From Auanema rhodensis (lineage: Eukaryota > Animalia > Nematoda), in NCBI GenBank assembly GCA_964057225.1, contig CAXKVF010000068.1, positions 1 through 30,432 of the forward strand: a DNA stretch of 30,432 nucleotides, given 5' to 3'. Of this stretch, positions 1-22,800 are shown piece by piece. How positions within the stretch are numbered: position 1 is the first letter of the stretch; each line of letters starts with the position of its first letter. The translations under genes were made by a program, and so were the position numbers. Under the pieces are notes generated by a model. That model was given only the letters and a program-made list of their open reading frames with translations. It was not told where the DNA came from and made no database searches.

Positions 1-420
1 TTATATTGAGGCTTAGACTTGAGTATTTTGGGGATTAGGCTCAACTATATCTCACTAAGGCTTAGGTATATCGGGCTCAGGCTTAACTATGTTTCACTCA
101 GGCTTAAGTATATCAGGCTTAGGCTTAACTATATCTCCCTCAGGCTTGAGTTTATCGGGCTCAGGCTTAACTATATCTTACTCAGACTAAAGTATATTGG
201 GCTTAGGCTTTCAGGCTTAGGTATATGGGGCTTAGGCCTAACTATATCTTACTCAGGCTTGAGTATATTGGGCTTAGGCTTAACTATATCTTACTCAGGC
301 TTAAGTATATCGAGCTTAGGCTTGACTATCATACTCAGGCTTAGGTATATCGATCTTAGGCTTTCAGGCTTAGGTATATGGGGCTTAGGCTTTCAGGCTT
401 AAGTATATGGGCTATATGGG
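1..420 (+). repeat. Degenerate telomere-like (TTAGGC-derived) minisatellite, ~21/42-bp units
   Basis: Repeated ggcttaggctt / ctcaggcttaagtatat / ggcttaactatatct units, G-rich on the + strand. TTAGGC is the canonical nematode telomere repeat. Confidence 0.85.
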
Positions 421-2676: not shown

Positions 2677-3000
2677 CATGCGGAGAGATGAAATCAAATA
2701 GATTGTACTCATCACTATTCAATTATTTGTCCTTATATGAATCATATTTTTCATCATGTTTATCATCGTCATCAGCATTAGTTTCATAAACATCAATATT
2801 TTTTTTTTAATTATTGCCATTGTTTTTATCGTTTTCAATTTCAATGTTATTACTACTATTACTGTTTTCATTATTGCTATAAGTTTTTTTGTTTCGATTA
2901 TTATTATATTTATTATTGAAATTGATTGAAATTTTTTTTATAACTTTTAAAATTTATATCATTTTGACTATCAGGATCTCATAAATCTACAAAAGGTTTA
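2677..3000. repeat. Segmental duplicate of 3497-3810 (3' end and downstream tail of Rep paralogue 1)
   Basis: catgcggagagatgaaatcaaatagattgta...ctcataaatctacaaaaggtttat is present near-identically at both positions. Confidence 0.9.
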
Positions 3001-3071
3001 TACGTACGAATGGTTTATACGCACGATTTTATCTCTTTTATCTATCTATCACATTGCATAAATTTTTTGTC

Positions 3072-3495
3072 TCTCTATTCTTTCCAAATTTTTGCATGTT
3101 CCAGTGTTCTATTCTAACAAAGTTCTTTTTATTTAAGTTTGATAAATACTTATTCTCAGAAATATTTTTTGATCATACAGAGTCGAGAAAATTACTCTTC
3201 AACGAAGATGAAAGAGTTTTTCCAGATTAGGAGTAGGGGAAACACCCCTAAGATTAAAATAGATATGTACTTTTTTTTGAGATGTAAAACATGAAGAAGA
3301 ATTATTAGATCAGGAGTAGGGGAAACACCCCTAAGATTATTCATCTCTTTCCTCTTTCCAAATTTTTTCATGTTCCAGTGTTCTAATCTAACAAAGTTTT
3401 TTTTTTATGTTTGATAAATACTTATTCTCAGAAATATTTTTTGATCATACAGAGTCGAGAACATTACTCTTCAACGAAGATGAAAGAGTTTTTCC
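3072..3495 (+). repeat. ~280-bp repeat unit (about 1.5 copies) containing two TAGGGGAAACACCCCTA palindromes; direct-repeat copy at 14759-15076
   Basis: aaattactcttcaacgaagatgaaagagtttttcc...gataaatacttattctcagaaat...cagagtcgaga is duplicated locally and again at 14.76-15.08 kb. Confidence 0.85.
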
Positions 3496-3787
3496 CATGC
3501 GGAGAGATGAAATCAAATAGATTGTATTCATCACTATTCAATTATTTGTCCTTATATGAATCATATTTTTCATCATGTTTATCATCGTCATCAGCATTAG
3601 TTTCATAAACATCAATATTTTTGTTTTAATTATTGCCATTGTTTTTATCGTTTTCAATTTCAATGTTATTACTACTATTACTGTTTTCATTATTGCTATA
3701 AGTTTTTTCGTTTCGATTATTATTATATTTATTATTGAAATTTTTTTTATAACTTTTAAAATTTATATCATTTTGACTATCAGGATC

Positions 3788-5213
3788 TCATAAATCTACA
3801 AAAGGTTTATCTTCTTCGTAATCACTTTGAAATGTCCGAATTGTTTTGAACCCATGCCCTTCTTTCCATATTGGTTGTTGTTGCAACGCTGTACTTTTTC
3901 CAATCCAATGAATACGTCCCATGAATGCCTTGAGCTGAAAAATATAAAGTTAGTTAAAATTATAGAAGTCTATAATTTCGACACTAGAAAATAAATGTAA
4001 TGCTGAAATAATAAAAATTATTCACCGTTTCTGGATCTCCCGGAAACCATTCTCTTGGATGAAAATTCGAAAGTAAAAAAATTTTAGTTGCATATATGGT
4101 GCAACTGGAAAACTTCACATTTAAGCTGAAAAAATCAATTGGAGTGAGCATTACACATAACACCTACCGACAAACTCCATCATTGCAAAGAAGTAAAAGT
4201 TGTCGTGATGACATATAACCACGTTGTCCAAAATGAACTACTTCTTCTAGTATAATAGAATCTTCATCATTATATTCTGAAACAACGATTATAAACTTAT
4301 TACTTTCAGAACATACAAAAAAACTCACTCTCAAAATATGCAGAATTATCCGCGGCAACTGTATAACAATCATCTCCTAAAAATCAAATCAAATAATAAA
4401 TGTTATTGATCAAAAACTGTCTATACCTAAGAATGAATTGGCAAAATATGATTTTCCTGTACGAGTATCACCGTATAAAACGTAAACACGCACATTTTTG
4501 CGTCTGGCTTTTTTTGGAATCACCCGTTGAAAAGCACTCCTCAGTTCAGCTATATGACGCAAAGCAACATCATATTTGATTAGATCCTGACAGTCTTCGA
4601 CTGTCCAACCATTGTTCTGTATGTTGAAAAGCATTGCATTGACATAACAACGGCTCAAATCTGCAACATGTCTGCCTAAAAGTAAACAAATACGTGAAAT
4701 AAAAAAAAAATCATTAACCTATTATAAGATGTGATTTTTTATCTAGTTTTGAACGTAGTTTATGCAATTCCACGTTAGTGGTTATGCGGTTTAATACGCA
4801 ACTATATGCACCACAATTGCTTCTTGTTTCCAAAACTTCGTAAAAGAAGTCAAAAACATCTTTTTCAATCACAATATTATTGAAAAAAAGAATGAGCTGA
4901 ACAAATAAGGGAAAAAAATATTAAAAAAGAGGTAAGAAGTGCAAACCAGTATTGTTTCGCTCGAACCATCTTCATTGCAGTACTCAATGCATCGTAACTT
5001 TGTTGACAAATTGAATTCGGCTTCTTTACAGAAATTTACGAATTTACTAATCAAATAGGCCGGACCAATTGATAATTGAACCGAACAACACACGAAATTA
5101 GGTTCTACATGTCTTACTTTTTTAATCTGAAAAATTGAACAATGTTATGTTTATTCAAATTTGAAAACCTTGTTCATTTGTTCTGCAAGAGTTTGTCTGT
5201 TTTCGTAGTTCAT
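3788..5213 (-). CDS. Rep-like SF3 helicase paralogue 1 (CRESS-DNA virus Rep type), 8 exons, ~351 aa
   Basis: Exons 5213-5169, 5126-4947, 4896-4719, 4675-4427, 4376-4329, 4276-4168, 4125-4026, 3934-3788, all GT-AG and phase-consistent. Spliced protein shows Walker A VYVLYGDTRTGKS, YFEKY (at the position of WWDGY), Walker B IILEE, B' LLLLCNDGVCRLNVKFSS, motif C IFLLSNFHPREWF and Arg finger KAFMGRI. No recognisable HUH or YxxK motif in the N-terminus. Start codon less certain. Confidence 0.85.
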
Positions 5214-5467
5214 ATTCTCCTCATCTTCATTGATGAGCTGTTGTGTTATCTCATTTTGAAAAAACACATTGAAAAGATAGGGGAAACACCCCTACTGTTT
5301 GTTAGGGGATATACCCCTATAAAGCAATAGTTAGCTGTCCCTACGCAAAATTGGGGAATTGCCGCTATTGAAAAAACAATAGAAGCCCCCAAAGAAAACA
5401 AAACATAATAACAATGAAACTACAAATTATGAAAATTTTTAGAATTATTAGTATAAAAAAAATCTTA

Positions 5468-6162
5468 TTATCTTACCCATGTTATCGCTAGAAGTTTTCT
5501 TTTCCTATTCGAATTTATTGAATCAGAGAACTCACTTGAGTTCTAAAAAAAATTGTTTTTTTTCTTCAAAGTTTAAAACAAACCTCGTCATTTGTTTCGT
5601 GAATTTGTGAACTGGCTAAATAATTGGATGAAACTGAAATACGTCCACGCTCCATAAACGGAAACAGAACCAAACTTTTCTGTGAACATTCAAACAATAC
5701 TGAGATACAAATCAATAGAAAACGTACTTCTAGTTCTAAATTTTCCATATTGATGGGTTGTGTTGTATTGATTTCTTGCGCATCCTCTTCTCTTATTTCC
5801 AAACTAGCCGAAGATTTCTGAGATCCCGTTTCAAAATCAGTATCCGTGAATGGAAACGAGATCAAACAATTCTGAAAACATGCATATCCACAAAATAATA
5901 ATGTGGAACCAACCTCTTCTTCTTCTTCATCGTTATTGTTTCTGATACTTTGAGTAGACAGTGGTTGTGAATCTATTTCTTCAATCTAAATTGATTTAGT
6001 ACATTAACATTAATCCAGCAAGCACTAAAAATAAATCATTGAACTAACTGTTTGATCATTGATGAAATTCAATGAGAAATTATCAGCGTGTTCAATAAAA
6101 CCATGTTCGATTCCTTGTGGAACTCCATTAATTTTCCTGCCATTGTATTCAGATATTTTCAT
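5468..6162 (-). CDS. Hypothetical acidic, low-complexity spliced protein (about 5 exons) with C-terminal RKRK NLS-like motif
   Basis: MKISEYNGRKINGVPQGIEHGF...NDQT / IEEIDSQP...DEEEEE / NCLISFPFTDTDF...LELE / KSLVLFPFMERG...NDE / NSSEF...NRKRKLL, joined by phase-0 GT-AG introns. The 3' end is uncertain (possible extra donor gtaag at ~5476). Confidence 0.55.
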
Positions 6163-6716
6163 GTTTTACAAACGATGAATTGATTTGAAACTGAAAAAAT
6201 GCCATGAATGCTAGAAGAATAGAGGAAACAACTATGAAAGTTTCAAAAACGGAACAAACAAAGTTTTGAATCACGACACAGAACAATGAATCGATTTAAT
6301 TTTTTTAAACAATAGAAGAATCACCATATGACCCGAAGAAACAATGAATAATCTAAGTGTTCACATATTCATGCAAAATAAAAAAACGGCAATCTTGGAA
6401 GGCACATCAAAAAAAAACTTTAATTTATGAGGTAGTCATATTTCATGTCTGTCATATAAACATATATGAACATATATGAACATGTATATGTATTTAAAAA
6501 GGGGCGGCAGTGTTTTTCGGCATGTTGAAAGTAGCCTCAAATTTACGAGGTACTAGTTGTTACATATTATGTATATTACATTATAGCCATTTCATGAACA
6601 TGTGTAACAAGAATCATTATAACATGTTTCAATTTTGAGAAAAAAAAACCAAAATATCTCATTAGTTATATTAGTTGTTCTATTTATTTGTTTTTATCTT
6701 TGAAAAATTTACAGAA

Positions 6717-7953
6717 ATGACTCGAGTTATACGTCAAGATTGTTTTCTCAATTCATGCACAACATCATCTTCCATTGCTGCAAAAGAACTGTTTAATGTT
6801 ATAAGTCATAATGATCTTTTGCACACATACATCGATGTAAGACCATACGTTATCATAATATTACATTTTCTTTCACTTCAGATTTTTATGATGAAAAATG
6901 TTGCTGGTTTTGCCAAAAATAAACATGTGAGCGAGATGCAACTACACTTTTTCAAATATTTTTTACAATCACACAATCCAACCGTGTCGCTTGCTGCAAT
7001 CAAAATTGTGGTATTATTTTGTTTATAATTTGAACCTAAATAGAAAAATAACATTTTATAATAACTTTTTTTTAAGATCATCAATGTCATTATACGTGAC
7101 TCAAAATTCAGCATTATGATAGAGAAAGATGTTCGAAAAGAACCATTTTTTGTCCAGTTTCTTTATCTCGCTCAATCATCATTTATGGAAATGAGATTAA
7201 ACAAGACATCGGTTTAGTTTTCATTATATTTAATAACATTGTGAAAAACAAAATACACTAAATTCATGAATAATTTCAAAAAAAAGCATTACAAACTTTT
7301 AGAATAAATTTTTAACGGCTCTTCATCGATATGTGATGAAATGGAAGAATAAATCTATTGCTGAAGTGGAAAATAAAGTCAGTATTTTTCATTGAAAAAA
7401 TGAACTTTAGAAACTTTTAGGACGACACATTTAGAACAAACGTTGAAACACCAATTTATTACGATAATAGAACTCAGGTTTTTTGAGATACTTCTTCTTA
7501 TCGAATTGTTAAATTTCAGAACATCAACAGAGAAGAAAATACATGTTGTGCTTGCAATGGCACACTTCCTGATTTACTTGCTGAAACAATCATATCAATG
7601 CGCATGGACTTATGTGAGAATAACGAGAAAGACTACGAATGGAAAATACTGAACAAGGAGCAATGTTCCAAACAAATTCTCACGTAAGTTTATGAATTAT
7701 CTTTAATTTACATAAACAACTTATATTTCTTTTCAGTGAAGGCATACAAATGATAGCCTTTATTGCTACACGGCGTAAACCACCCACATGGATTCGTATA
7801 AAATTTATCAGATTTAATCGTCTTGGTAACTTAGAATTTTTCATCCGTCGAAAAAACTCATATTCACCAACTAAAAATTTATCTGTTCTAAAACATTGTA
7901 AAAGTTGTTTTCACAAAATATGTCTTGTTTTACAAAAAAAAAAATATAAATAG
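6717..7953 (+). CDS. Hypothetical 7-exon protein, ~298 aa; N-terminal CID/VHS-like helical domain and C-terminal Cys-rich region
   Basis: Exons 6717-6836, 6882-7010, 7077-7211, 7303-7377, 7421-7477, 7520-7683, 7737-7953 are phase-consistent. LQSHNPTVSLAAIKIVIINVIIRDSK...LHRYVMKWKNK resembles the CID/VHS pattern (by eye only). CCAC...CKSC follows. Confidence 0.7.
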
Positions 7954-8104
7954 AATAAATTATACCCATCCACACGTTGATTTGATAGGGGTTTTTCCCG
8001 GATTGTAGAATTGAAGAATAAACAACCGCTCACCATTAAAATTGATTGCGGATCTTAAATGTTATATCGAATAAAAATTTTTAAGGCTGAAATATGTTAA
8101 CGAA

Positions 8105-8440
8105 ATAGGGTTTTCTAATGTTTACTAGGGGTTTTCCCCGTACTCAGACAATGCTTGATCGAACTACGTGAAAAAATGCTTGCAATATAACATTTGAGCG
8201 CAATTGCAAAAGTGGACGGAGCCTGCGCCCTATTCCATGTAATGTTGCGAAAGTGGGCAGAGCCTGTGCTTCATTCCATATAGTGCTATAAAATTGGACA
8301 GAGCCCCCCGCACCTCTCTACCATAATACAAAATAGAAAATTCAAAAGAACACTAGTGAAAAATAGGGGTTGTACCCCTAGATAAAAAAAATAAGGGTTG
8401 TACCCCTAGGTAAAAAAATAGGGGTTGTACCCCTAGGTAA
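8105..8440 (+). repeat. Diverged copy of the shared intergenic module (end of the 150-bp unit plus GC-rich block), followed by three TAGGGGTTGTACCCCTAG-type units
   Basis: taatgtttactagggg...agacaatg...gagcgcaattgcaaaagtgg...gagcctgcgccctattccatgtaatgttgc...gcacctct matches 11540-11755. Three palindromic units at 8364, 8392 (one mismatch) and 8419. Confidence 0.85.
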
Positions 8441-9024
8441 AAAATCTGGTAATAATAAGAAGCTCAAAGTACAGAGTTGATTGCACAGTAGTACACAAAA
8501 AGTAGAGTGTTTTATTATGAAAAGTCAGAAATCTTTAAACAGCATTTTGTCAGAACATTTAAAAAAATCATTTTGCAAGTTGTAAAACGCAATAACTTCT
8601 TTGAAGTTTTATCCGATTTTGACACTTTATTCCCATCATAAAAGTTTCCAGAAGTTCTCCGACTCGTAAAACTTGTAAACTATTTTCATCAGTTTTTATA
8701 TTGTTTTGCTATTAGGACAAATCTCAAACGATTTCATTCAAACAACAAAAGGACTTGCCGTCAGCAAATTAATAATGAACTTTTACCGATTGGTTTAACC
8801 CATTGACAGGTTCAAAACTTTTTTGGTATTGACTTTTTATTCCCATAATAAACTTGCAGGGAAGACGTTTCACCTTATATGAAACTTTTGTTATTCATTT
8901 CTTTCAATTTGTTGTTTTGTTTACAGGTATTCACGATAATTAATGTTGTTTCATGTCTGACATTTCGATTATATTTTGGTTGTCTTCTTCATTTATTTTA
9001 TTGTTTTGTTTCCAGGTGTTCATA

Positions 9025-10216
9025 ATGATTAGTTCTAATATGATTCGTTCAAATGTAACTCCTAACAAAACAGGTACCACTATAGTTATTGTTCTTGTTT
9101 TCTGATGTTTTTAGTTTTAGAATTAGATTCTTTTGAAAATGAAATTGTCCCTACTCCAGTTGCTCCTAGTAAAGATATCTCTCTACCGATACAACATGTA
9201 GATGATGAAGGTTTTTATGGAATATAAACTTTATTTTGATGTTAATATGTAATTTCAGGTTCAGACTCTTTTGAGAAAGAGAACGTTGTTATCTCAGCTG
9301 AGCGTACAAGAAGTTTTCAGTCACCTGTCAATTTTGAAAACGAAGGTTTTTGCAGAAATATTAATTCAATGTTTATGTGACATTTAGAACTTGAAATTAT
9401 TCAAGAAATGGAATTCAATGGACAGCGATGCTCCACCCCTCTTCATGAAAAGTTGTTGCCAAGTATTCATCAAGCTATAGTAAAAGGTAAGAAACATTTT
9501 ATCATAAACATTTCTGTATTAATACATTCAGAAGAAACAAATAATGAGGATTTATTTACTGATTCACTGGAAGAAATTTCTCATTCCGAAGGTAACCTTG
9601 TTCTAAAAATGTTCATGAATATATATTTCCAGTTTTTTTCGAAATTGATGAACAAGAAAATCTATCGAATGATATTAATTTGACAAATATGAAAAAAAGA
9701 AGAAGAAGCTCAGGAGACGTTATTTGCGAATGTAGTTGTGAAATCAAACGCTTGACAAATAAAGCTATTCAAAAAATAGCTAGTAAGTTATAGTTGAAAA
9801 TTTGAAAATTCACATTTTTATATTTGATTAATTATAGGAAACTTACAACCTATTATTGATAGGCAATGCATACCAGAACTTTGCCTGATAGGAACCAAAA
9901 TCTTGGTTTATCACCGGAACACACGTTCCTGGCGTCTAGGAGTCATACAAGACATATCTGACATTTATAGCACAATAACATATTCTCTTATCACAGTAAA
10001 ATTATAAATTTTCTAATTTTTGATTTCATAATCATTCAAATTTAGACTAGTGATGTGGAAGATACGCTTTTAGCCAAAAAATACAAATTTTTATTAACCA
10101 AGAAGCGATTGGTGGGCAAACAGAAAGACTGGCCTAAACACACATACAGACTGATTTGTGATGATATTTCTAAACCTCATTTGTATTTAATTCAAACACT
10201 GTATGACTTAGATTAA
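9025..10216 (+). CDS. Hypothetical 8-exon protein, ~287 aa; acidic N-half, KKRRRS NLS, C-terminal Tudor/Agenet-like domain
   Basis: Exons 9025-9073, 9121-9210, 9259-9345, 9388-9486, 9532-9591, 9633-9782, 9838-9995, 10046-10216 are phase-consistent. LIGTKILVYHRNTRSWRLGVIQDISDIYSTITYSLITTSDVEDTLL fits the Tudor pattern iG.rv.vy......W..G.I........i.Y......E. Extra 5' exons in 8.5-9.0 kb are possible. Confidence 0.7.
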
Positions 10217-10545
10217 TTTTTCTTTCAATTTTTTGTTTATCCTTTTTGTATTAAGCTGTATCTTATACCACATCGGTTTTTTTCTCAATTTCTTGTTTTT
10301 TTTTCTTAATTTCTTGTTCATACTTTCACTATTAAACTGTATCATATAACTCAAAACTTATCTTCCAATTTCTTGTTCATACTTTTTTTAATAAACTATA
10401 TCACAAATTTCTCATAGGGGTTTCTCCCCTATTTACATTGTTGCTGAAAACTTTCAACGTGCATTGCACACCTTTTGTATAAAGTTAACGTTTTTTTATT
10501 TTTTTCGCTTATTTGATTTTAATATGATGACTCGAACTAACCTTA

Positions 10546-11238
10546 ACGGGGCTGGTTAATGACGACATTTTTCAAAACCAATCATTTCAATTTTGACACA
10601 TGGAATATTTTTTACTTTCCGATATTTGATTTATCTTTAATAGATTATGAGTTTTATGAACGGGGCTTGTTAATGACAATCTCTCATGAAGTGATATGCT
10701 TCACTGAAATTTACACTTTTTCCGCGTATGACATTTTTCAAAACCAATTATTTCAATTTTGACACATGGAATATTTTTTACTTTCCGATATTTGATTTAT
10801 CTTTAATAGATCATGAGTTTTATGAACGGGGCTTGTTAATGACAATCTCTCATGAAGTGATATGCTTCACTGAAATTTACACTTTTTCCGCGTGTGACAT
10901 TTTTCAAAACCAATTATTTCAATTTTGACACATGGAATATTTTTTACTTTCCGATATTTGATTTATCTTTAATAGATCATGAGTTTTCTGAACGGGGCTT
11001 GTTAATGACAATCTTTCATGAAGTGATATGCTTCACTGAAATTTACACTTTTTCCGCGTATGACATTTTTGAAAACCAATTATTTCAATTTTGACACATG
11101 GAATATTTTTTACTTTCCGATATTTGATTTATCTTTAATAGATCATGAGTTTTCTGAACGGGGCTTGTTAATGACAATCTTTCATGAAGTGATATGCTTC
11201 ACTGAAATTTACACTTTTTCCGCGTATGACATTTTTTT
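10546..11238 (+). repeat. 166-bp tandem repeat, about 4 copies
   Basis: tgacatttttcaaaaccaattatttcaattttgacacatgg...ggggcttgttaatgac recurs every 166 bp; the repeated ORFs start at 10728, 10894 and 11060. Confidence 0.95.
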
Positions 11239-11274
11239 TGAATCAGTTAGTTGTTAACTTGATTGGTTCTAGTA

Positions 11275-12165
11275 GGCAGAGCCCCCGCACCTCTATACCA
11301 TAAAACATTAAAATACATACTCAATAAAAAATACATATTATTCCTAAAAAAAAAATTTTTAATAATCAAAAATAATAACGAAAAAAACTTGTTAATGTTT
11401 ACTAGGGGTTTTTCTCCTAATTAGACAATGGTCGATCGAAATACTTGAAAAAATGCTTTCATTATAACATTTGAATAAAAAATACATATTATTCCTGAAA
11501 AAAGTTTTTTAATAATCAAAAATAATAATGAAAAAAATTTGTTAATGTTTACTAGGGGTTTTTCCCCTAATTAGGCAATGGTCGATCGTAATACTTGAAA
11601 AAATGCTTTCATTATAACATTTGGGCGCAATTGCAAAAGTGGGCGGAGCCTGCGCCATATTCCATGTAATGTTGCAAAAGTGGGCGGAGCCTGCGCTTTA
11701 TTTCATGTATTGCTATAAAATTGGGCAGAGCCCCCGCACCTCTATACCATAATACATTAAAATTTATTGCGGATCGTGCAAAATACATACTCAATAAAAA
11801 ATACATATTATTCCCAAAAAAAATTTTTTAATAATCAAAAATAATAATGAAAAAAATTTGTTAATGTTTACTAGGGTTTTTTCCCCTAATTAGACAATGG
11901 TCGATCGAAATACTTGAAAAAATGCTTTCATTATAACAGTTGAATAAAAAATACATATTATTCCTAAAAAAAATTTTTTAATAATCAAAAATGATAATGA
12001 AAAATATTTGTTAATGTTTACTAGGGGTTTTTCCCCTAATTAGACAATGGTCGATCGAAATACTTGAAAAAATGCTTTCATTATAACATTTGAGCGCAAT
12101 TGCAAAAGTGGGCGGAGCCTGCGCCCTATTCCATGTAATGTTGCAAAAGTGGGCGGAGCCTGCTC
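11275..12165 (+). repeat. Shared intergenic module: 150-bp tandem units plus GC-rich blocks with GGGCGG boxes
   Basis: Four 150-bp units (taaaaaatacatattattcc...taggggtttttccccta...ggtcgatcg...ataacatttg) and two blocks of gcgcaattgcaaaagtgggcggagcc. Confidence 0.9.
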
Positions 12166-12259
12166 GCTGTTCGCCATAATGATACCCAATTTTTCTCATT
12201 TTTATGAACCCAATTTTTCTCATTTTTATGAATCCAATTTTTTATTCAAGTGCTCTTCA

Positions 12260-12778
12260 ATGGATGTAGGTTGGTGAAATTAATATTATATCAGTTGTAT
12301 TTTTGTTTTGTTTTTTTTTTCAGAAGAAGTCGTAGAATTTCTAATTCAAAGTACAGAAAGTACTCCACTCCAGAAAAAACGGAAGAAAACAGTTCCCAAA
12401 AAATCACAAAAATCGAAGGTATGTTACTGTGTTTATTTGAAAATTTAAAATCTATTTCCAGGTTGAGAATGAAATCTCTCATTATCAAAAATCTTTAAAA
12501 AATATGATTCCCAAACTAAGTTTTCAAAGAGTATGTCGGGAAATTATTCAGAAAATGGGAGATTTTCGGATGACAGGAGGAAGTCTGGCAGCGCTTCAAG
12601 TCAGAAATTTTTTTTATCGACTAAAATTCATAATAACAATTTTCAGGAAGCATCCGAAGCTTACTTGGTGAATTTATTTGAGCTTTCCTCGATAGCTGCG
12701 CTTCACGCAGGTCGAAAAACTGTTATGCCAAAGGACTTTTTGTTAGTGAAGTTACTGAATTGCGGTAAACTTTTTTAA
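12260..12778 (+). CDS. Divergent histone H3 variant, 4 exons, 124 aa
   Basis: Exons 12260-12269, 12324-12418, 12462-12599, 12647-12778 give [124 protein letters not shown]. This is colinear with the H3 fold (EIRRYQKS, FQRLVREI, ALQEA.EAYLV.LFE, HAKRVTIMPKD). Confidence 0.92.
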
Positions 12779-12952
12779 AATTCTCTGTTTTTCTGAGTTG
12801 TTGTTGTTCATTTTCACTGTTCCTGTTTGTTTACTTAAAAGACTTTTTTTCTCTTTATATTTTGTTTAATGTGTGGATATTCCATTCTTACTTGATTTTT
12901 ATTGATTTGGCAATTTAATTTAACTACCTCATTTTTTTCATGTGTCAGTGAT

Positions 12953-13944
12953 ATGAATTTTGCATATGTTGCTGAAAATTTAGGCAAACGCAGACTTAAT
13001 CCTTCAATAGGTATATTTTCGATTTTTCCAGAGTTCTCAAAATAATTTTTTATTAGGACTAGATATGTGGAGCGAGAACGGAACTGCCGCTGAAGGGCTC
13101 ACGGAAGAAGAAAGAGATTTCATCGATGACTCATATGGTTAGTGGATTTATTCAATGTAAAACGTGAATCTAATATTCCTATCTTTCAGATTTAGAAAAA
13201 GAAAAAGTAGAAATGTTTTCTTTATTAAGCGGTGAGAAACACGAACAAGAAAAAAGAGCTGTAAGCAGAAGAATTGAATCGAGGAAAGATGTATTCATCT
13301 TAGACAAACCACGCAGAATTCAAGTTAGTTTTCAATATATTCTTTTCTGAAAAATTTTCTTTCTAGCTGAAATCGAAAATAAATTGTTCTAACTCAACAA
13401 ATTTAATGCAATTTCTATTGATAGTTTTGAAAATTCCCGAAGAACGTAATTTTTTGCTCGAGCTTAAAGAAAACAGTTTGGAGAAAAAAAAGAAAAACTC
13501 GCTAATTAATGGTTTCTCTAGGTGCGCTAAAGAAATAACGGTACGTTTCATTATTTTTCCAATTTCCATGAGACATTACAGTTTTGTGCCATCGACGGCT
13601 TTGTTTATGCTAAAAAATCTGGTGAATTTCTAACAAATAGCCGTTTGCAGCAAGCGAATACACTCCATTCATTTTGCTGCTCTGAGAAAGGAATTTTTGC
13701 TGCTGAGTTAGTCATTTTTGAGTTCAAACTTAATACTAACTGCCGAACACTCAGATTTGGAAAGATTTCTTTAATAGAAGATGTACAAGAGAAAGAAAAA
13801 ACGTTCTTCATTTTCTCAATTTTTGTTTTTTCAATCTCTTGCTCTCATTGCAAAACGTATTTGAACTCGTTATGTAATACGGAAAAGGTAATGAGTTGTA
13901 TACGTACCCACGTGATGGATTTTATCTTGAGAAACATAGAATAA
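12953..13944 (+). CDS. Hypothetical 5-exon protein, ~269 aa, with KRRL and acidic DFIDDS motifs and a C-terminal CxxC
   Basis: Exons 12953-13010, 13057-13137, 13190-13323, 13367-13540, 13582-13944 are phase-consistent with no internal stop. Confidence 0.7.
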
Positions 13945-13952
13945 ATTTTTTT

Positions 13953-14753
13953 AAAAAATACGTATTATTCCTAAAAAAAATTTTCAATAATTAAATATAA
14001 TAATGAAAAATATTTGTTAATGTTTACTAGGGGTTTTTCCCCTAATTAGACAATGGTCGATCGAAATACTTGAAAAAATGCTTTCATTATAACATTTGAA
14101 TAAAAAATACATATTATTCCTAAAAAAAATTTTTTAATAATCAAAAATGATAATGAAAAATATTTGTTAATGTTTACTAGGGGTTTTTCCCCTAATTAGA
14201 CAATGGTCGATCAAAATACTTGAAAAAATGCTTTCATTATAACATTTGAATAAAAAATACATATTATTCCTAAAAAAAATTTTTTAATAATCAAAAATGA
14301 TAATGAAAAATATTTGTTAATGTTTACTAGGGGTTTTTCCCCTAATTAGACAATGGTCGATCGAAATACTTGAAAAAATGCTTTCATTATAACATTTGAA
14401 TGAAAAATACATATTATTCCTAAAAAAAAATTTTTAATAATCAAAAATAATAATGAAAAATATTTGTTAATGTTTACTAGGGGTTTTTCCCCTAATTAGA
14501 CAATGGTCGATCGAAATACTTGAAAAAATGCTTTCATTATAACATTTGAATAAAAAATACATATTATTCCTAAAAAAAAATTTTTAATAATCAAAAATAA
14601 TAATGAAAAATATTTGTTAATGTTTACTAGGGGTTTTTCCCCTAATTAGGCAATGGTCGATCTTGAAAAAATGCTTTCATTATAACATTTGAGCGCAATT
14701 GCAAAAGTGGGCGGAGCCCGCGCCCTATTCCATGTAATGTTGCAAAAGTGGGC
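13953..14753 (+). repeat. 150-bp tandem repeat x5 plus GC-rich block; same family and orientation as 11275-12165
   Basis: Exact 150-bp period, ending in gagcgcaattgcaaaagtgggcggagcc...gcaaaagtgggc. Confidence 0.95.
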
Positions 14754-14758
14754 ATAAT

Positions 14759-15076
14759 AAAATTACTCTTCAACGAAGGTGAAAGAGTTTTTCCACATTA
14801 GGCTTAGGGTGAAACAGTAGGGGAAACACCCCTAAGATTAAAATAGAAATGTACTTTTTATTGAAGTGTAAAACATGATGAAGAATTATTAGATTAGGAG
14901 TGAGGGAAACACCCCTAAGATTAATAATCTCTTTTCTCTTTCCAAATTTTTTTATGTTCTAGTGTTCTATTCTAACAAAGTTCTTTTTTTTTATATTTGA
15001 TAAATACTTATTCTCAGAAATAATTTTTGATAATACAGAGTCGAGAAAATTACTCTTCAGCGAAGATGAAAGAGAT
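14759..15076 (+). repeat. Direct-repeat copy of 3189-3492
   Basis: Colinear match including both ggaaacacccctaagatt motifs; contains an extra ttaggcttaggg. Confidence 0.88.
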
Positions 15077-15087
15077 TTCATTGATGA

Positions 15088-16085
15088 TTTCCGATTGATT
15101 TCCTATGTGTCATTTTTGAGATGAACTATTTTAAAAATTGTGAAAATCACCAAAAAACCCAAGATTCAAAAGATCATATGTTCTTTCAAACTTGAGCCAA
15201 CAACAAGCCCCTCTCGAAAGTATGCTGAATGATACATTTTCATTCATATATGAACTCTCGATTAATTTCCTATGTGTCATTTTTGAGATGAACTATTTTA
15301 AAAATTGTGAAAATCACCAAAAAACCCAAGATTCAAAAGATCATATGTTTTTCCAAACTTGAGCCAACAACAAGCCCTTTTTGAAAGTATGCTGAATGAT
15401 ACATTTTCATTCAAATATGAACTACCGATTGATTTCCTATGTGTCATTTTTGAGATGAACTATTTTAAAAATTGTGAAAATCACCAAAAAACCCAAGATT
15501 CAAAAGATCATATGTTCTTTCAAACTTGAGCCAACAACAAGCCCCTTTTGAAAGTATTCTGAATGATACATTTTCATTCATATATGAACTCCCGATTGAT
15601 TTCCTATGTGTCATTTTTGAGATGAACTATTTTAAAAATTGTGAAAATCACCAAAAAACCCACGATTCAAAAGATCATATGTTCTTTCAAACTTGAGCCA
15701 ACAACAAGCCCTTTTCGAAAGTAAGCTGAATGATACATTTTTATTCATATATGAACTACCGATTGATTTCTTATGTGTCATTTTTGAGATGAACTATTTT
15801 AAAAATTGTGAAAATCACCAAAAAACCCAAGATTCAAAAGATCATATGTTCTTTCAAACTTGAGCCATCCAAAAATCAAAAAAAAACCAACATTTAAAAG
15901 GTCATATGTTTTTCCAAAATTGATCCAGTAACAAGCGCCTTGCGATAATATGTTGAATGACCCATTTTCATTCATATATCAACTCACAATTCATTTTCTA
16001 TGTGTCTATTTTGAGATAAATTGTTTTAAAAAATCTTGAAATCACCAAAAAACCCAACATTTAAAAGGTCATATGTTTTTCCAAA
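15088..16085 (+). repeat. 167-bp tandem repeat, about 4.7 clean copies plus a degenerate tail
   Basis: cgatt(g/a)attt(c)ctatgtgtcatttttgagatgaac recurs at 15092, 15259, 15426, 15593 and 15760. Confidence 0.95.
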
Positions 16086-16189: not shown

Positions 16190-16906
16190 TCAATGTGCAT
16201 ATCTTTCTAAAACAAATTTTGCTTTCCTGCGATTAATATGATTCATAAGCGAACGAAAAGTTGCCCCGTGTTCTAGCAATAAACTGGAAGCAATAGATAT
16301 GGGTATAATACTTGGGTTTATTAGACACTTTATGTGTAGAAATTCATAAACATGAATGAGTTCATGAACCATAACCGAAAGTAATTCCATTTTTTTGTCT
16401 TTTCTGAATGAAAAAGCAGTTTTTTTTGCACTGTCGCGCTTTTTTTCAAGAAATGAAGAACAAAAAAATGTTATCGAAATATTATTGCAATTTCTCGTAG
16501 TATAAGCATGTTTGTCTTTCATTGTGACATTACTATTACATTTTACTTGAATGGATATGCCGTAGGAGAAGATTTTGGAATCAAAAAAGTGAAAATCTAG
16601 ATATTTTAACAATTTTCTGAAACATCTTTCATCAGATGTGCAGGCGGGGAATGAGTTATTGTTCTCGATATCTGCTACAATATCAAAAAAACTCGTTGAT
16701 GTTTGTGCTGGCAATGGCATTTCAATTTGAGAAAAATCAAATGTTTCTGAGATAGTGTTTTTTTCCAACAATGCTTCATATTGTTCGCGAGTAATGAAGT
16801 TTTCGGATTTGCGTATTCCTTTTTTTTCACAGTGTACATACACTACATTAAAAGCAAACGAATTTCCATGAAGTTTTTCTTTGGACAAGAGAACCACGTA
16901 AGACAT
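16190..16906 (-). CDS. SprT/Spartan-like zinc metalloprotease domain protein (at least 238 aa)
   Basis: Longest ORF in the window. LLSVMVHELIH followed by HGATFRSLMNHIN matches the HExxH...HGxxF signature of the SprT family (SPRTN/GCNA/Wss1-like). A short upstream exon near 16954-16972 is possible. Confidence 0.8.
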   Translation of the reverse strand: MSYVVLLSKEKLHGNSFAFNVVYVHCEKKGIRKSENFITREQYEALLEKNTISETFDFSQIEMPLPAQTSTSFFDIVADIENNNSFPACTSDERCFRKLLKYLDFHFFDSKIFSYGISIQVKCNSNVTMKDKHAYTTRNCNNISITFFCSSFLEKKRDSAKKTAFSFRKDKKMELLSVMVHELIHVYEFLHIKCLINPSIIPISIASSLLLEHGATFRSLMNHINRRKAKFVLERYAH

Positions 16907-17399
16907 ACTGAATGAAATTATTATTCAAAATTTCCGAAAAGCAAATAATTTACCTTAAGGTTCGATTTTATTCTAAAATATTTCACTAAATCTTGAGTGG
17001 ACACTAAAAAAAATTATTAATTTCGAAAAAATTTCAAGAAGAATGAAAAATAAGATAAGAAGAATGAAAAAAATACAATGAACAATAAATCAAGAGATGA
17101 AAACAGTGAAAACACAGATGAGAATGACTGGAAAATGTGTGATTGTGATTGATTTAGATTAAACCATATTCCACCAAAACAAAAACATATATACGATACA
17201 GAATAAATTTCATAAATAAAAAAAATAAAAAGGAGAAAATAATGATGAGTAAATATTAGAGAAGAAAAAAAAATCGATCAAATTAAAACAAAAATTAATC
17301 AACGAACATTAGAAAAAGTTATGCTTCACAAAATATAAATAAAAAATCTATCAAAATTTGAGTTTGAGTTAGTAACAAGCCCCTCATTATCTCTATATA

Positions 17400-18196
17400 A
17401 TGGAAAACGAAATACAAAAAAAGAGCTGGAAGTTGACGGTAAGTAATAAGTTTTTCGAGCAATATTATTTTTTTTAGAACTGCTTGGAATTGCGTTATGA
17501 TGTAGCTATGTGGCATCAATCACAATTAAAACACTTAATATTCCTTGTTGACGATGCTGAATGTGATAGAAAGGATGTACGAGTATATATACTCTACGGA
17601 GATTCTGGAGCAGGCAAATCTTATTTTGCTAAGAAGTATCTCGGTATGAATTTTTTTTATTAATTTTCAAATTTGAAAAAACTATTTCAGCAAAAGTTGC
17701 CGGATCTGTGTATACAACATCTGCTGATTGTACTAGTTATTTTGAAAGTGAGTTTCAAATTTGTTCCGATAAAAAAAAATTTATAGAATATAACAAGCAA
17801 AAAAACAAGCAGAATTATAATTGATGAAGTTGAACAGTTCGGACAACGTGGGTACATGACAGGAAAACAGCTCTTAATGATGTGTAATGATGGTACCTGC
17901 AGGTAAGTGTTGAACACAAAAATAGTATTACTAAACCCATTTTTTCATATTGAACGTTAAATTTTCAAGTTGTGTCATAAAAGCCCATCATATCTTTCTT
18001 ATTTCGAACATAGAACCTTCGCAATGGTTTGGGAATGATCATATAACAGTGAGTTCCCGATAAGGTTAAAAATTACATTTGGTTTCAGTTGACAGCGTTC
18101 AAGAGACGAATACATTGGATTGGCAAAGCAACCGAATTGAAATCTCAACCGAAATGGAGGAGAGGAAAAGCATTTGAAACAGTTTTGAAAAATTAG
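17400..18196 (+). pseudogene. Rep-like SF3 helicase paralogue 2, helicase part only, disrupted
   Basis: VRVYILYGDSGAGKS, IIIDEVEQFGQRGY, LLMMCNDGTCRLNVKFSSC, IFLISNIEPSQWF and AFKRRIHWIGK, with four intron positions shared with paralogue 1. Lesions: frameshift explained by a 7-bp duplication aacaagc (17804-17810), acceptor cag>cat (17946-17948), and no N-terminal domain. Confidence 0.85.
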
Positions 18197-18488
18197 ATTC
18201 CCCATGTCCATATTAGTCTAAAAACAAATTTTTATTGATATTGGTTCATGGTAACCATGACTTTGAAATTTACGTGAACTTTAATTTATGCTAATTAAAT
18301 GTACACGTGATATGCACTTGGTATGTAACTCGCTTCACGTGAAAGATAAAGAGATGCGGTTTTCAAATTTAGATTCCCCATGTCCATATTAGTCTAAAAA
18401 CAAATTTTTATTGATATTGGTTCATGGTAACCATGACTTTGAAATTTACGTGAACTTTAATTTATGCTAATTAAATGTACACGTGATG
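18190..18488 (-). repeat. About 1.7 diverged, inverted copies of the 176-bp satellite family
   Basis: Period is exactly 176 (ttagattcccc at 18193 and 18369). Aligns with the reverse complement of the satellite through catattagtcta.aaaca, tggtaacca.gacttt.aa.ttacgtgaa, tgtaactcg and aaagata. Confidence 0.85.
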
Positions 18489-18515
18489 CGCTGCTCCCTA
18501 TCGTCGGGAGCAGCG
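18489..18515. other. Perfect GC-rich hairpin, 10-bp stem and 7-nt loop
   Basis: cgctgctccc-tatcgtc-gggagcagcg. Confidence 0.9.
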
Positions 18516-18621
18516 AGTGCGTGAAGGAGCTTAGTTTTTCAGGAACATCGTTTTTTCCCCATATCGTCTTTATCGTTACAAAATTTTTCCAATTTCCATG
18601 AGACATTGCAGTTTTGTGCCA

Positions 18622-19058
18622 GTTTAAAGTTATCTATTTCATCTATGATAATTGCTTCTTGGTTTTTGTATTCTGTAATTGAAACATTAATAATTGAAAT
18701 ATGTCATACTTATTCACTTTCGAAATGTGCCGAATTATCAGCTACTATGTGATACACACTATTACCTGGAAAATGAAACGTTAAGTGAAACAAAGTGTTA
18801 ACCAAGAAAAAACCTAGAAACTTTGAAGCAAAATGTGTTTTTCCTGTTCCTACATAACCATATAGTACATAAACGCGGACATTGGTTCTGTAAGCTTCCT
18901 TTGGTTCTTGGAAAACACACAATTGTTTCAATTGTGTCTGATGTCGCATGGTAGCATCAAGTTTCACTCCCATGCAGTCACAAAAACTCCAGCCATCATT
19001 TTCGATTTTTTTATCATTATGTCTAAATATCCGAGACTGAGTTCATTATCCTTGGTTC
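18622..19058 (-). pseudogene. Rep-like SF3 helicase paralogue 3, internal fragment
   Basis: ELSLGYLDIMIKK/IENDGW...NVRVYVLYGYVGTGKTHFASKFLG|NSVYHIVADNSAHFE|KYKNQEAIIIDE, with the same intron positions as paralogue 1. One-base frameshift in the T-run at 19006-19012. Cut 5' by the 37-bp array and 3' just after Walker B. Confidence 0.85.
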
Positions 19059-19116
19059 CTTAACGTTTCCAATAGAAAAATTAACGAAAAAAAATTTTTT
19101 AACTAGCATTTTTAGA

Positions 19117-19745
19117 AGCATGAGATCTATGACTAAGCATATGACTAAGTCTAAGCATGAGATCTATGACTAAGCATATGACTAAGTCTAAGCATGAGAT
19201 CTATGACTAAGCATATGACTAAGTCTAAGCATGAGATCTATGACTAAGCATATGACTAAGTCTAAGCATGAGATCTATGACTAAGCATATGACTAAGTCT
19301 AAGCATGAGATCTATGACTAAGCATATGACTAAGTCTAAGCATGAGATCTATGACTAAGCATATGACTAAGTCTAAGCATGAGATCTATGACTAAGCATA
19401 TGACTAAGTCTAAGCATGAGATCTATGACTAAGCATATGACTAAGTCTAAGCATGAGATCTATGACTAAGCATATGACTAAGTCTAAGCATGAGATCTAT
19501 GACTAAGCATATGACTAAGTCTAAGCATGAGATCTATGACTAAGCATATGACTAAGTCTAAGCATGAGATCTATGACTAAGCATATGACTAAGTCTAAGC
19601 ATGAGATCTATGACTAAGCATATGACTAAGTCTAAGCATGAGATCTATGACTAAGCATATGACTAAGTCTAAGCATGAGATCTATGACTAAGCATATGAC
19701 TAAGTCTAAGCATGAGATCTATGACTAAGCATATGACTAAGTCTA
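19117..19745 (-). repeat. 37-bp telomere-variant tandem repeat, exactly 17 identical copies
   Basis: Unit agcatgagatctatgactaagcatatgactaagtcta; 629 bp = 17 x 37. The minus strand reads TTAGAC TTAGTC ATATGC TTAGTC ATAGATC TCATGC. Confidence 0.97.
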
Positions 19746-19746
19746 A

Positions 19747-19894
19747 GCCTAAGCCTAAGCCTAAGCCTAAGCCTAAGCCTAAGCCTAAGCCTAAGCCTAA
19801 GCCTAAGCCTAAGCCTAAGCCTAAGCCTAAGCCTAAGCCTAAGCCTAAGCCTAAGCCTAAGCCTAAGCCTAAGCCTAAGCCTAAGCCTAAGCCT
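19747..19894 (-). repeat. Perfect telomeric tract (TTAGGC)24 on the minus strand, interstitial
   Basis: 24 x gcctaa followed by gcct. Confidence 0.98.
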
Positions 19895-22800
19895 GGTTAC
19901 CAAGCACCAAACACAATAAGATAGTGTTTCTAGACTAATATGACCATGAGGAATTCATTAAAATTTACAGAATGCTTCTATCTTTAACAGAAACCGAGTT
20001 ACAAATTATGAGCACTTAGCTCGGATACTTAGCTTGTATAGCTGACACTTCACGTAAAATTGAAAGTCCTGGTTACCAAGCACCAAACACAATAAGATAG
20101 TGTTTCTAGACTAATATGACCATGAGGAATTCATTAAAATTTACAGAATGCTTCTATCTTTAACAGAAACCGAGTTACAAATTATGAGCACTTAGCTCGG
20201 ACACTTAGCTGGTATAGCTGACACTTCACGTAAAATTGAAAGTCCTGGTTACCAAGCACCAAACACAATAAGATAGTGTTTCTAGACTAATATGACCATG
20301 AGGAATTCATTAAAATTTACAGAATGCTTCTATCTTTAACAGAAACCGAGTTACAAATCATGAGCACTTAGCTCGGACACTTAGCTTGTATAGCTGACAC
20401 TTCACGTAAAATTGAAAGTCCTGGTTACCAAGCACCAAACACAATAAGACAGTGTTTCTAGACTAATATGACCATGAGGAATTCATTAAAATTTACAGAA
20501 TGCTTCTATCTTTAACAGAAACCGAGTTACAAATTATGAGCACTTAGCTCGGACACTTAGCTTGTATAGCTGACACTTCACGTAAAATTGAAAGTCCTGG
20601 TTACCAAGCACCAAACACAATAAGATAGTGTTTCTAGACTAATATGACCATGAGGAATTCATTAAAATTTACAGAATGCTTCTATCTTTAACAGAAACCG
20701 AGTTACAAATTATGAGCACTTAGCTCGGACACTTAGCTGGTATAGCTGACACTTCACGTAAAATTGAAAGTCCTGGTTACCAAGCACCAAACACAATAAG
20801 ATAGTGTTTCTAGACTAATATGACCATGAGGAATTCATTAAAATTTACAGAATGCTTCTATCTTTAACAGAAACCGAGTTACAAATTATGAGCACTTAGC
20901 TCGGACACTTAGCTGGTATAGCTGACACTTCACGTAAAATTGAAAGTCCTGGTTACCAAGCACCAAACACAATAAGATAGTGTTTCTAGACTAATATGAC
21001 CATGAGGAATTCATTAAAATTTACAGAATGCTTCTATCTTTAACAGAAACCGAGTTACAAATCATGAGCACTTAGCTCGGACACTTAGCTTGTATAGCTG
21101 ACACTTCACGTAAAATTGAAAGTCCTGGTTACCAAGCACCAAACACAATAAGACAGTGTTTCTAGACTAATATGACCATGAGGAATTCATTAAAATTTAC
21201 AGAATGCTTCTATCTTTAACAGAAACCGAGTTACAAATTATGAGCACTTAGCTCGGACACTTAGCTTGTATAGCTGACACTTCACGTAAAATTGAAAGTC
21301 CTGGTTACCAAGCACCAAACACAATAAGATAGTGTTTCTAGACTAATATGACCATGAGGAATTCATTAAAATTTACAGAATGCTTCTATCTTTAACAGAA
21401 ACCGAGTTACAAATTATGAGCACTTAGCTCGGACACTTAGCTGGTATAGCTGACACTTCACGTAAAATTGAAAGTCCTGGTTACCAAGCACCAAACACAA
21501 TAAGATAGTGTTTCTAGACTAATATGACCATGAGGAATTCATTAAAATTTACAGAATGCTTCTATCTTTAACAGAAACCGAGTTACAAATCATGAGCACT
21601 TAGCTCGGACACTTAGCTTGTATAGCTGACACTTCACGTAAAATTGAAAGTCCTGGTTACCAAGCACCAAACACAATAAGATAGTGTTTCTAGACTAATA
21701 TGACCATGAGGAATTCATTAAAATTTACAGAATGCTTCTATCTTTAACAGAAACCGAGTTACAAATTATGAGCACTTAGCTCGGACACTTAGCTTGTATA
21801 GCTGACACTTCACGTAAAATTGAAAGTCCTGGTTACCAAGCACCAAACACAATAAGATAGTGTTTCTAGACTAATATGACCATGAGGAATTCATTAAAAT
21901 TTACAGAATGCTTCTATCTTTAACAGAAACCGAGTTACAAATCATGAGCACTTAGCTCGGACACTTAGCTGGTATAGCTGACACTTCACGTAAAATTGAA
22001 AGTCCTGGTTACCAAGCACCAAACACAATAAGATAGTGTTTCTAGACTAATATGACCATGAGGAATTCATTAAAATTTACAGAATGCTTCTATCTTTAAC
22101 AGAAACCGAGTTACAAATCATGAGCACTTAGCTCGGACACTTAGCTTGTATAGCTGACACTTCACGTAAAATTGAAAGTCCTGGTTACCAAGCACCAAAC
22201 ACAATAAGATAGTGTTTCTAGACTAATATGACCATGAGGAATTCATTAAAATTTACAGAATGCTTCTATCTTTAACAGAAACCGAGTTACAAATTATGAG
22301 CACTTAGCTCGGACACTTAGCTTGTATAGCTGACACTTCACGTAAAATTGAAAGTCCTGGTTACCAAGCACCAAACACAATAAGATAGTGTTTCTAGACT
22401 AATATGACCATGAGGAATTCATTAAAATTTACAGAATGCTTCTATCTTTAACAGAAACCGAGTTACAAATTATGAGCACTTAGCTCGGACACTTAGCTTG
22501 TATAGCTGACACTTCACGTAAAATTGAAAGTCCTGGTTACCAAGCACCAAACACAATAAGATAGTGTTTCTAGACTAATATGACCATGAGGAATTCATTA
22601 AAATTTACAGAATGCTTCTATCTTTAACAGAAACCGAGTTACAAATTATGAGCACTTAGCTCGGACACTTAGCTGGTATAGCTGACACTTCACGTAAAAT
22701 TGAAAGTCCTGGTTACCAAGCACCAAACACAATAAGATAGTGTTTCTAGACTAATATGACCATGAGGAATTCATTAAAATTTACAGAATGCTTCTATCTT

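What the first reader, a model, noticed from the sequence alone, without database searches (positions are those of the whole stretch)
3788..5213. Circovirus-like Rep with seven spliceosomal introns and an apparently dead HUH domain
Seen: an open 8-exon frame with the complete SF3 motif order of CRESS Reps. The ~170-aa N-terminus has Rep-like length but no HxH or YxxK; IEYCNEDGSSETILLILFF sits where E...G..HLQG.i.f is expected. Walker B is EE rather than DD/DE. Known: endogenous CRESS Reps are normally intronless or nearly so. Inference: long residence in the host with retained DNA binding or oligomerisation but loss of nicking.
Basis: partly seen in the sequence, partly recalled or inferred. 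Interest (0 to 1): 0.82.

Follow-up and report, generated by a model that had tools for sequence, protein, structure and literature searches.

The report
Orphan intron-rich P-loop ATPase gene family
The eight-exon gene is real and belongs to a small, old family of ATPase genes in what looks like a nematode chromosome region full of satellites, but nothing I was allowed to run shows that it descends from a circovirus-like Rep or ever had a nicking domain.

Summary
On the minus strand, 5213 to 3788, an ATG-to-TGA frame of 351 codons is open across 8 exons and 7 GT..AG introns of 42-91 nt. It carries Walker A, Walker B (EE), an Asn motif and a conserved Arg, spaced 35/45/20 residues, which is SF3-like. 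No HxH, HxQ or YxxK occurs in the N-terminal exons.

Two further copies lie in the window, both degenerate or truncated. They share introns 4-7 at the same positions and phases. They are 47-66% identical in protein, with synonymous sites saturated, so the core is old and was under selection.

Exon-by-exon scans of Pfam, PHROGs, NCBIfam, PADLOC and PDB give only sub-threshold generic P-loop hits. An exhaustive profile search of 1.84 billion proteins gives no true relative. The N-terminal 150 residues match nothing and are absent from the paralogues.

The host DNA carries (TTAGGC)n and nematode-type short introns.

The parts
3788..5213 (-). Copy 1: intact 8-exon gene, 351 codons plus TGA
5169..5213 (-). 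Exon 1 (15 codons, ATG; ends in phase 0)
4947..5126 (-). Exon 2 (60 codons); orphan N-terminal region
4719..4896 (-). Exon 3 (178 nt, ends in phase 1); orphan N-terminal region
4427..4675 (-). Exon 4 (249 nt); the core shared with the paralogues starts about residue 18 of this exon; contains Walker A
4449..4472 (-). Walker A (G-x4-G-K-S); G, G and K invariant in all three copies
4329..4376 (-). Exon 5 (48 nt, phase 1 on both sides)
4168..4276 (-). Exon 6 (109 nt); contains Walker B
4242..4256 (-). Walker B (hydrophobic run plus E-E; D-E in the two paralogues)
4026..4125 (-). Exon 7 (100 nt); contains the motif C / sensor-1-like S-N
4065..4082 (-). Motif C-like hydrophobic strand ending S-N (invariant in copies 1 and 2)
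3788..3934 (-). Exon 8 (48 codons plus stop)
3896..3916 (-). Conserved R-I-H-W-I-G-K block; candidate arginine finger 20 residues after the Asn
17078..18196 (+). Copy 2: degenerate paralogue with counterparts of E4-E8 in the same order and the same intron positions and phases. It has no counterpart of E1-E3. It has three defects: one frameshift, one lost splice signal and one insertion-like interruption. The 5' bound is uncertain.
18539..19042 (-). Copy 3: paralogue truncated at both ends, with counterparts of E4-E6 only. These are open, and introns 4 and 5 are at the same positions and phase.
2677..3001 (-). Duplicate (96-100% identical) of 3496-3810, that is, the 3' flank plus the last 23 nt of copy 1

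Best explanation
Copy 1 is the intact member of a multi-copy gene family confined, as far as can be seen, to the source lineage. The source is very probably a nematode. The family encodes a small P-loop ATPase of the ASCE type.

Shown:
- The conserved core is about 200 residues, from mid exon 4 to exon 8. It carries Walker A, Walker B, a sensor-1 / motif C Asn and a conserved Arg.
- The spacing is 35, 45 and 20 residues. From my own knowledge this is the compact layout of superfamily 3 helicases rather than of classical AAA+ proteins.

Inferred:
- The protein binds and hydrolyses ATP as an oligomer and acts on nucleic acid.
- The N-terminal 150 or so residues (E1-E3) are a copy-specific extension of unknown fold without nuclease motifs. 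They may not belong to the ancestral gene.
- The family spread by duplication within repeat-rich DNA containing telomere repeats. Two of the three copies here are decaying.

A viral or mobile-element origin of the core is possible, but nothing run here demonstrates it.
For: - The splice model is open with canonical sites.
- Paralogues share exon order and introns 4-7.
- Protein identity between copies is 47-66%, with pN 0.20-0.39 against pS 0.72-0.89, which is saturated. This indicates long purifying selection.
- The motif residues are invariant across copies.
- Only P-loop families appear in Pfam, PHROGs, NCBIfam and PDB, all below cut-off.
- There is no true relative in 1.84 billion representative proteins or in the word searches.
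- Nematode-type context: a perfect (TTAGGC)x25 array, which is the conserved nematode telomere repeat (abstract of 10.1101/2023.03.29.534350), and 42-52-nt introns ending in TTTCAG.
Against: - The SF3-like assignment rests on motif order and spacing and on two sub-threshold hits. No family model or solved structure supports it significantly.
- The only structure prediction possible by reference (exon 4 alone) was useless, with pLDDT 46.7.
- There is no transcript evidence.
- The support for E1-E3 is only moderate (6 of 300 shuffles).
- The exhaustive search used exon 4 only. The more conserved exons 6-8 are too short to search alone.
Confidence: 0.55

Rival explanations
1. One reading: an endogenous CRESS-DNA-virus (circovirus-like) Rep that gained seven introns and lost the HUH and Tyr catalytic residues, while keeping the SF3 helicase.
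For: - The overall length (351 aa) and the layout, an N-terminal region of about 150-170 aa followed by an SF3-like Walker A/B/C order.
- Weak hits to two SF3 families: PPV_E1_C at E 0.007 and RNA_helicase PF00910 at E 0.069.
- CRESS-like endogenous Rep sequences are known from nematode genomes (PMC6186406).
Against: - No Rep family model appears at all on any exon, even at E up to 10.
- No Rep appears among the hits of the exhaustive profile search, although the library holds metagenome proteins.
- The N-terminal exons match nothing and are missing from both paralogues.
- No stem-loop with a long loop next to the gene behaves as an origin. The flanking TAGGGG-N5-CCCCTA palindromes are a dispersed repeat that lies mostly in 150-bp tandem arrays and is absent near copies 2 and 3.
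- The known nematode endogenous Reps were found by plain BLAST (PMC6186406). This gene is not detectable that way.
Confidence: 0.12
2. The core derives from another virus or mobile element with an SF3 helicase (parvovirus-like NS1, a primase-helicase of large DNA elements, or a virus-like extrachromosomal element). The N-terminal exons were added later in the host.
For: - The compact SF3-like spacing (35/45/20), derived.
- An E-E Walker B occurs in parvovirus-type SF3 helicases (my own knowledge).
- The family is multi-copy and sits in repeat-rich DNA.
- The conserved core starts just before the ATPase, and the paralogues lack E1-E3.
Against: - No significant hit to any such family.
- D-E, not E-E, in the two paralogues.
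- No terminal repeats, capsid or other element gene found beside any copy.
Confidence: 0.18
3. The N-terminal exons E1-E3 are not part of the gene. The real product would start at the in-frame Met early in exon 4, or use other 5' exons, and would be an ATPase core of about 200 residues only.
For: - Similarity to the paralogues begins about residue 18 of exon 4, just after an in-frame Met.
- Exon 4 is preceded by a TTTTAG acceptor of the kind used for trans-splicing in nematodes (the trans-splicing point is my own knowledge).
- The shuffle test for E1-E3 is only moderately significant, at 6 of 300.
Against: - E1-E3 show in-frame enrichment of G at codon position 1 like the core.
- Exon GC is higher than intron GC.
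- All three introns are phase-compatible with good acceptors.
Confidence: 0.25

Closest known systems
Superfamily 3 (SF3) helicase domains of small DNA virus and plasmid replication proteins
   Same: The order is Walker A, Walker B, an Asn-ending strand (motif C) and an Arg shortly after. The spacing is compact, at 35, 45 and 20 residues. The core is about 200 residues.
   Different: No SF3 family model (PF00910, PF00519, others) reaches its cut-off on any exon. No solved SF3 helicase appears among the PDB hits. The fold was not testable.
CRESS-like endogenous viral Rep sequences of nematodes and other invertebrates (PMC6186406)
   Same: A chromosomal, Rep-sized gene in a probable nematode. 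Some copies are degenerate.
   Different: Those elements are recognisable by BLAST to viral Reps and keep the HUH and Tyr motifs or their remnants. This gene has no detectable similarity to any Rep, has seven introns, and its N-terminal region is not shared even by its own paralogues.
Classical AAA+ ATPases
   Same: The exon 6 profile weakly resembles the Walker B region of FtsH and NSF, at E 0.24-2.4. The Asn after a hydrophobic strand resembles sensor 1.
   Different: The distance from Walker A to Walker B is about 35 residues rather than the 50-60 usual in classical AAA+ proteins (my own knowledge). All hits are sub-threshold.

Membership tests
CRESS-DNA virus Rep (Cressdnaviricota) | HUH (or HUQ) metal-binding motif II in the N-terminal domain | tested here: not met
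   No HxH or HxQ in E1-E3 or the start of E4. The exon ends were read directly.
CRESS-DNA virus Rep (Cressdnaviricota) | Catalytic Tyr motif III (YxxK) | tested here: not met
   No YxxK in E1-E4. The only YxxK lies in E7, inside the ATPase core.
CRESS-DNA virus Rep (Cressdnaviricota) | Significant match to a Rep family model or to known Reps | tested here: not met
   The exon-by-exon Pfam scan shows no Rep model. The exhaustive profile search with exon 4 gives no Rep.
CRESS-DNA virus Rep (Cressdnaviricota) | HUH-nuclease fold of the N-terminal domain | not testable with these tools
   This needs E1-E3 joined, and no reference exists for a joined sequence. Single exons are too short.
CRESS-DNA virus Rep (Cressdnaviricota) | Nearby origin stem-loop with a conserved loop sequence | tested here: not met
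   The only hairpins are TAGGGG-N5-CCCCTA palindromes with 5-nt loops. They are a dispersed repeat (15 copies), mostly in tandem arrays and not near copies 2 and 3.
SF3 helicase | Walker A, Walker B and motif C (Asn) in order with compact spacing, plus an Arg finger | tested here: met
   K209, E244-E245, N290 and R310. All are conserved in the paralogues.
SF3 helicase | Significant profile or structural similarity to SF3 helicases | tested here: inconclusive
   PPV_E1_C at E 0.007 and 15.9 bits against a cut-off of 26.5. PF00910 at E 0.069. Generic AAA models score equally. The PDB gives nothing specific. AF2 of exon 4 alone gave pLDDT 46.7.
Endogenous viral element | Demonstrable homology to an exogenous virus gene | tested here: not met
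   The scan of viral contig collections was left out.

The most novel reading that the evidence does not exclude
An ancient SF3 helicase gene, captured from a virus or a virus-like element, has been kept under selection as a small intron-rich gene family in nematode chromosome-end or satellite-rich (possibly germline-restricted) DNA. It has diverged so far that it escapes all sequence-based detection of endogenous viral genes.
Probability: 0.25. Interest if true: 0.65.

Novelty: new member of a known kind. Interest (0 to 1): 0.38.

Why it matters
If the core proves to be virus-derived, it would be an unusually old, intron-rich and selection-maintained capture of a viral helicase in an animal genome. 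It would also be invisible to the usual BLAST-based screens for endogenous viral elements.

As it stands, it is an orphan P-loop ATPase family in a repeat-rich region of a probable nematode. That is useful for annotation, and as a caution that motif order alone does not make a Rep.

Tried and rejected
Searches that gave nothing useful:
- Exon-by-exon scans of Pfam, PHROGs, NCBIfam and PADLOC gave only sub-threshold generic P-loop hits for the exon 4 pieces, and nothing for E2, E3, E6, E7 or E8.
- PDB sequence and profile searches with E4, A1, A2 and A3 gave chance-level hits: designed P-loop protein, McrB-type GTPase, KaiC, VPS4, Fab light chains, FtsH and NSF.
- Word searches with E4, E2 and the neighbouring 238-aa ORF found nothing.
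- The exhaustive HMMER profile search returned three hits, all giant repetitive proteins whose score is a sum of chance repeats.
- Exact-protein look-ups of three window ORFs found nothing on record.
- Rfam and tRNA scans found nothing.
- AF2 of exon 4 alone and of the 238-aa ORF gave pLDDT 46.7 and 37.3, so no fold search was run.
- The flanking palindromes were considered as a Rep origin and rejected.
- No terminal inverted repeats lie around any copy.
- Literature searches found no described nematode family of this kind.

Full report
THE OBSERVATION

The feature lies on the minus strand. An ATG at 5213 opens a frame that stays open through eight exons to a TGA at 3790-3788:
- E1 5213-5169
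- E2 5126-4947
- E3 4896-4719
- E4 4675-4427
- E5 4376-4329
- E6 4276-4168
- E7 4125-4026
- E8 3934-3788

The coding length is 1056 nt, or 351 codons. The seven introns are 42, 50, 43, 50, 52, 42 and 91 nt. All are GT..AG, and five end in TTTCAG. Exons have GC 0.30-0.39. Six of the seven introns have GC 0.19-0.28.

Read exon by exon, the product has:
- a Walker A (G-x4-G-K-S, K209);
- a Walker B (hydrophobic run plus E244-E245);
- a hydrophobic strand ending S-N290;
- a conserved Arg at 310.

The spacing is therefore 35, 45 and 20 residues. No HxH, HxQ or YxxK occurs in the N-terminal exons.

IS IT MORE THAN CHANCE?

For the C-terminal two thirds, yes, beyond doubt. tblastn of the single exons against the window finds two more copies.
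- Copy 2 lies on the plus strand within 17078-18196. It has counterparts of E4, E5, E6, E7 and E8 in order.
- Copy 3 lies on the minus strand within 18539-19042. It has counterparts of E4, E5 and E6.

Reading these regions as they stand shows that introns 4 and 5 sit at the same codon positions and phase in all three copies. Introns 6 and 7 do so in copies 1 and 2. These four introns are therefore shared by relatives, and the splice model is not an artefact.

Per-exon codon comparison, with numbers added across exons and no sequences joined, gives 47-66% protein identity. Non-synonymous differences are 0.20-0.39 per site and synonymous differences 0.72-0.89 per site, which is saturation. The copies are old, and the protein was under purifying selection for most of that time. 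The Walker A Gly and Lys, the Walker B Glu, the Ser-Asn and the Arg block are invariant.

Copy 1 is the only intact copy.
- Copy 2 lacks any counterpart of E1-E3. It has three defects: one frameshift, one lost splice signal and one insertion-like interruption.
- Copy 3 is truncated at both ends. Its three remaining exon counterparts are open.
- A fourth trace exists: 2677-3001 duplicates 3496-3810 at 96-100% identity, including the last 23 nt of the gene.

THE N-TERMINAL REGION

E1-E3 and the first 17 or so residues of E4 (about 150 residues) have no counterpart in the other copies. They have no hit in any library or in a word search.

Their coding status rests on three points:
- The open, phase-compatible splice path. 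Six of 300 dinucleotide shuffles gave a path as long.
- In-frame enrichment of G at codon position 1: 0.25 against 0.15 and 0.11 out of frame, similar to the core.
- The contrast in GC between exons and introns.

The exons are therefore probably real, but they may be a copy-specific addition. An in-frame Met lies early in E4, just before the point where similarity to the paralogues begins. This leaves room for a product of about 200 residues consisting of the core alone. Nothing indicates that this region ever was an HUH nuclease.

WHAT FAMILY IS IT?

- Pfam gives, for exon 4, PPV_E1_C (an SF3 family) at E 0.007 and 15.9 bits, against a cut-off of 26.5.
- For the copy 2 piece, Pfam gives RNA_helicase PF00910 at E 0.069 over 16 residues, among equally weak AAA_22, AAA_24, AAA_16, NACHT and KaiC hits.
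- PHROGs, NCBIfam and PADLOC give only generic P-loop matches.
- PDB searches give generic P-loops for exon 4 and chance-level matches for exons 6 and 7.

Because the word search and the family scans left the protein open, I used the one exhaustive search on a profile of exon 4 from the three copies. Of 1.84 billion representative proteins, only three passed E 0.001. All three are giant repetitive proteins whose score is a sum of chance repeats.

The family therefore has no detectable relative at this level. True CRESS-like endogenous Reps of nematodes were found by ordinary BLAST (PMC6186406). This gene is not of that recognisable sort.

The SF3-like reading rests on motif order and spacing, which I judge from my own knowledge of the families, and on two sub-threshold hits. 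It is a resemblance, not a demonstrated membership. Walker B is E-E only in copy 1. The paralogues have D-E.

CONTEXT

The window is AT-rich (GC about 0.30) and consists largely of tandem repeats.
- A perfect (TTAGGC)x25 array lies internally at 19745-19892, between a 37-bp array and a 176-bp satellite of 60 units that runs to the end of the window.
- Degenerate TTAGGC-containing repeats open the window.
- TTAGGC is the conserved nematode telomere repeat (abstract of 10.1101/2023.03.29.534350).
- Together with the 42-52-nt introns ending in TTTCAG, this points to a nematode. The species could not be identified.
- Copies 2 and 3 lie tail to tail, separated by two units that are 72% like the 176-bp satellite.
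- Satellite-rich DNA next to telomere repeats is what has been described for eliminated germline DNA in several nematodes (PMC13370393). Whether this region is of that kind cannot be told from the sequence.

MOST LIKELY MECHANISM

Shown:
- An intact, spliced gene of an old, selected, multi-copy family.
- Conserved ATP-binding and hydrolysis motifs.

Inferred:
- The product is an oligomeric ATPase that acts on nucleic acid, of SF3-like layout.
- It has an orphan N-terminal extension that cannot nick DNA by HUH chemistry.

The origin, viral or mobile against cellular, is unresolved. I give the CRESS Rep reading about 0.12 and any viral or mobile origin about 0.3.

SLIPS

I also worked through where the defects of copy 2 lie. 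I stopped when I noticed.

VERDICT

The gene is a new, orphan member of the P-loop ATPase kind. Interest is moderate to low unless the full-length comparison shows a viral origin.

Noticed in passing
window 19745-19892 (with 19116-19744 and 19892-30432): A perfect internal array of 25 nematode-type telomere repeats, (TTAGGC)n on the minus strand. It is sandwiched between a 37-bp tandem array and a 176-bp satellite of about 60 units at 98% identity. It looks like an old chromosome end or a healed break buried in satellite.
   Followed up: partly
window 12533-12778 (+): An 81-aa ORF whose C-terminal half matches the Pfam Histone fold above the cut-off (PF00125, E 1.5e-8, 35.4 bits). It is H3-like and only part of a histone, so it is a fragment or a divergent variant.
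   Followed up: partly
window 16190-16906 (-): An intronless 238-aa ORF with an HExxH motif and a weak SprT-like hit (E 0.028), lying head to head with copy 2. No homologues were found, and the AF2 model is of low confidence.
   Followed up: partly
window 3234-14834, 15 sites (e.g. 3234, 3317, 5278, 5303, 8364, 14028): The palindrome TAGGGG-N5-CCCCTA occurs 15 times against 0 expected. Most copies lie inside the 150-bp tandem repeats at 11323-12093 and 13952-14692. Two lie on each side of copy 1. It may be a hairpin of a dispersed repeat family.
   Followed up: partly
window 18184-18540: Two units that are 72% identical to the 176-bp satellite, in the opposite orientation. They fill the gap between the 3' ends of copies 2 and 3.
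   Followed up: yes
window 37-413 and 1016-2583; 10564-11236; 15091-16085: Further tandem arrays: TTAGGC-containing 21/42-bp units; 47/61/108-bp units; a 166-bp array at 98% identity; and 167/227-bp units.
   Followed up: no
window 2677-3001 vs 3496-3810: A near-perfect duplication of the 3' flank and the last 23 nt of copy 1, about 810 bp downstream.
   Followed up: yes
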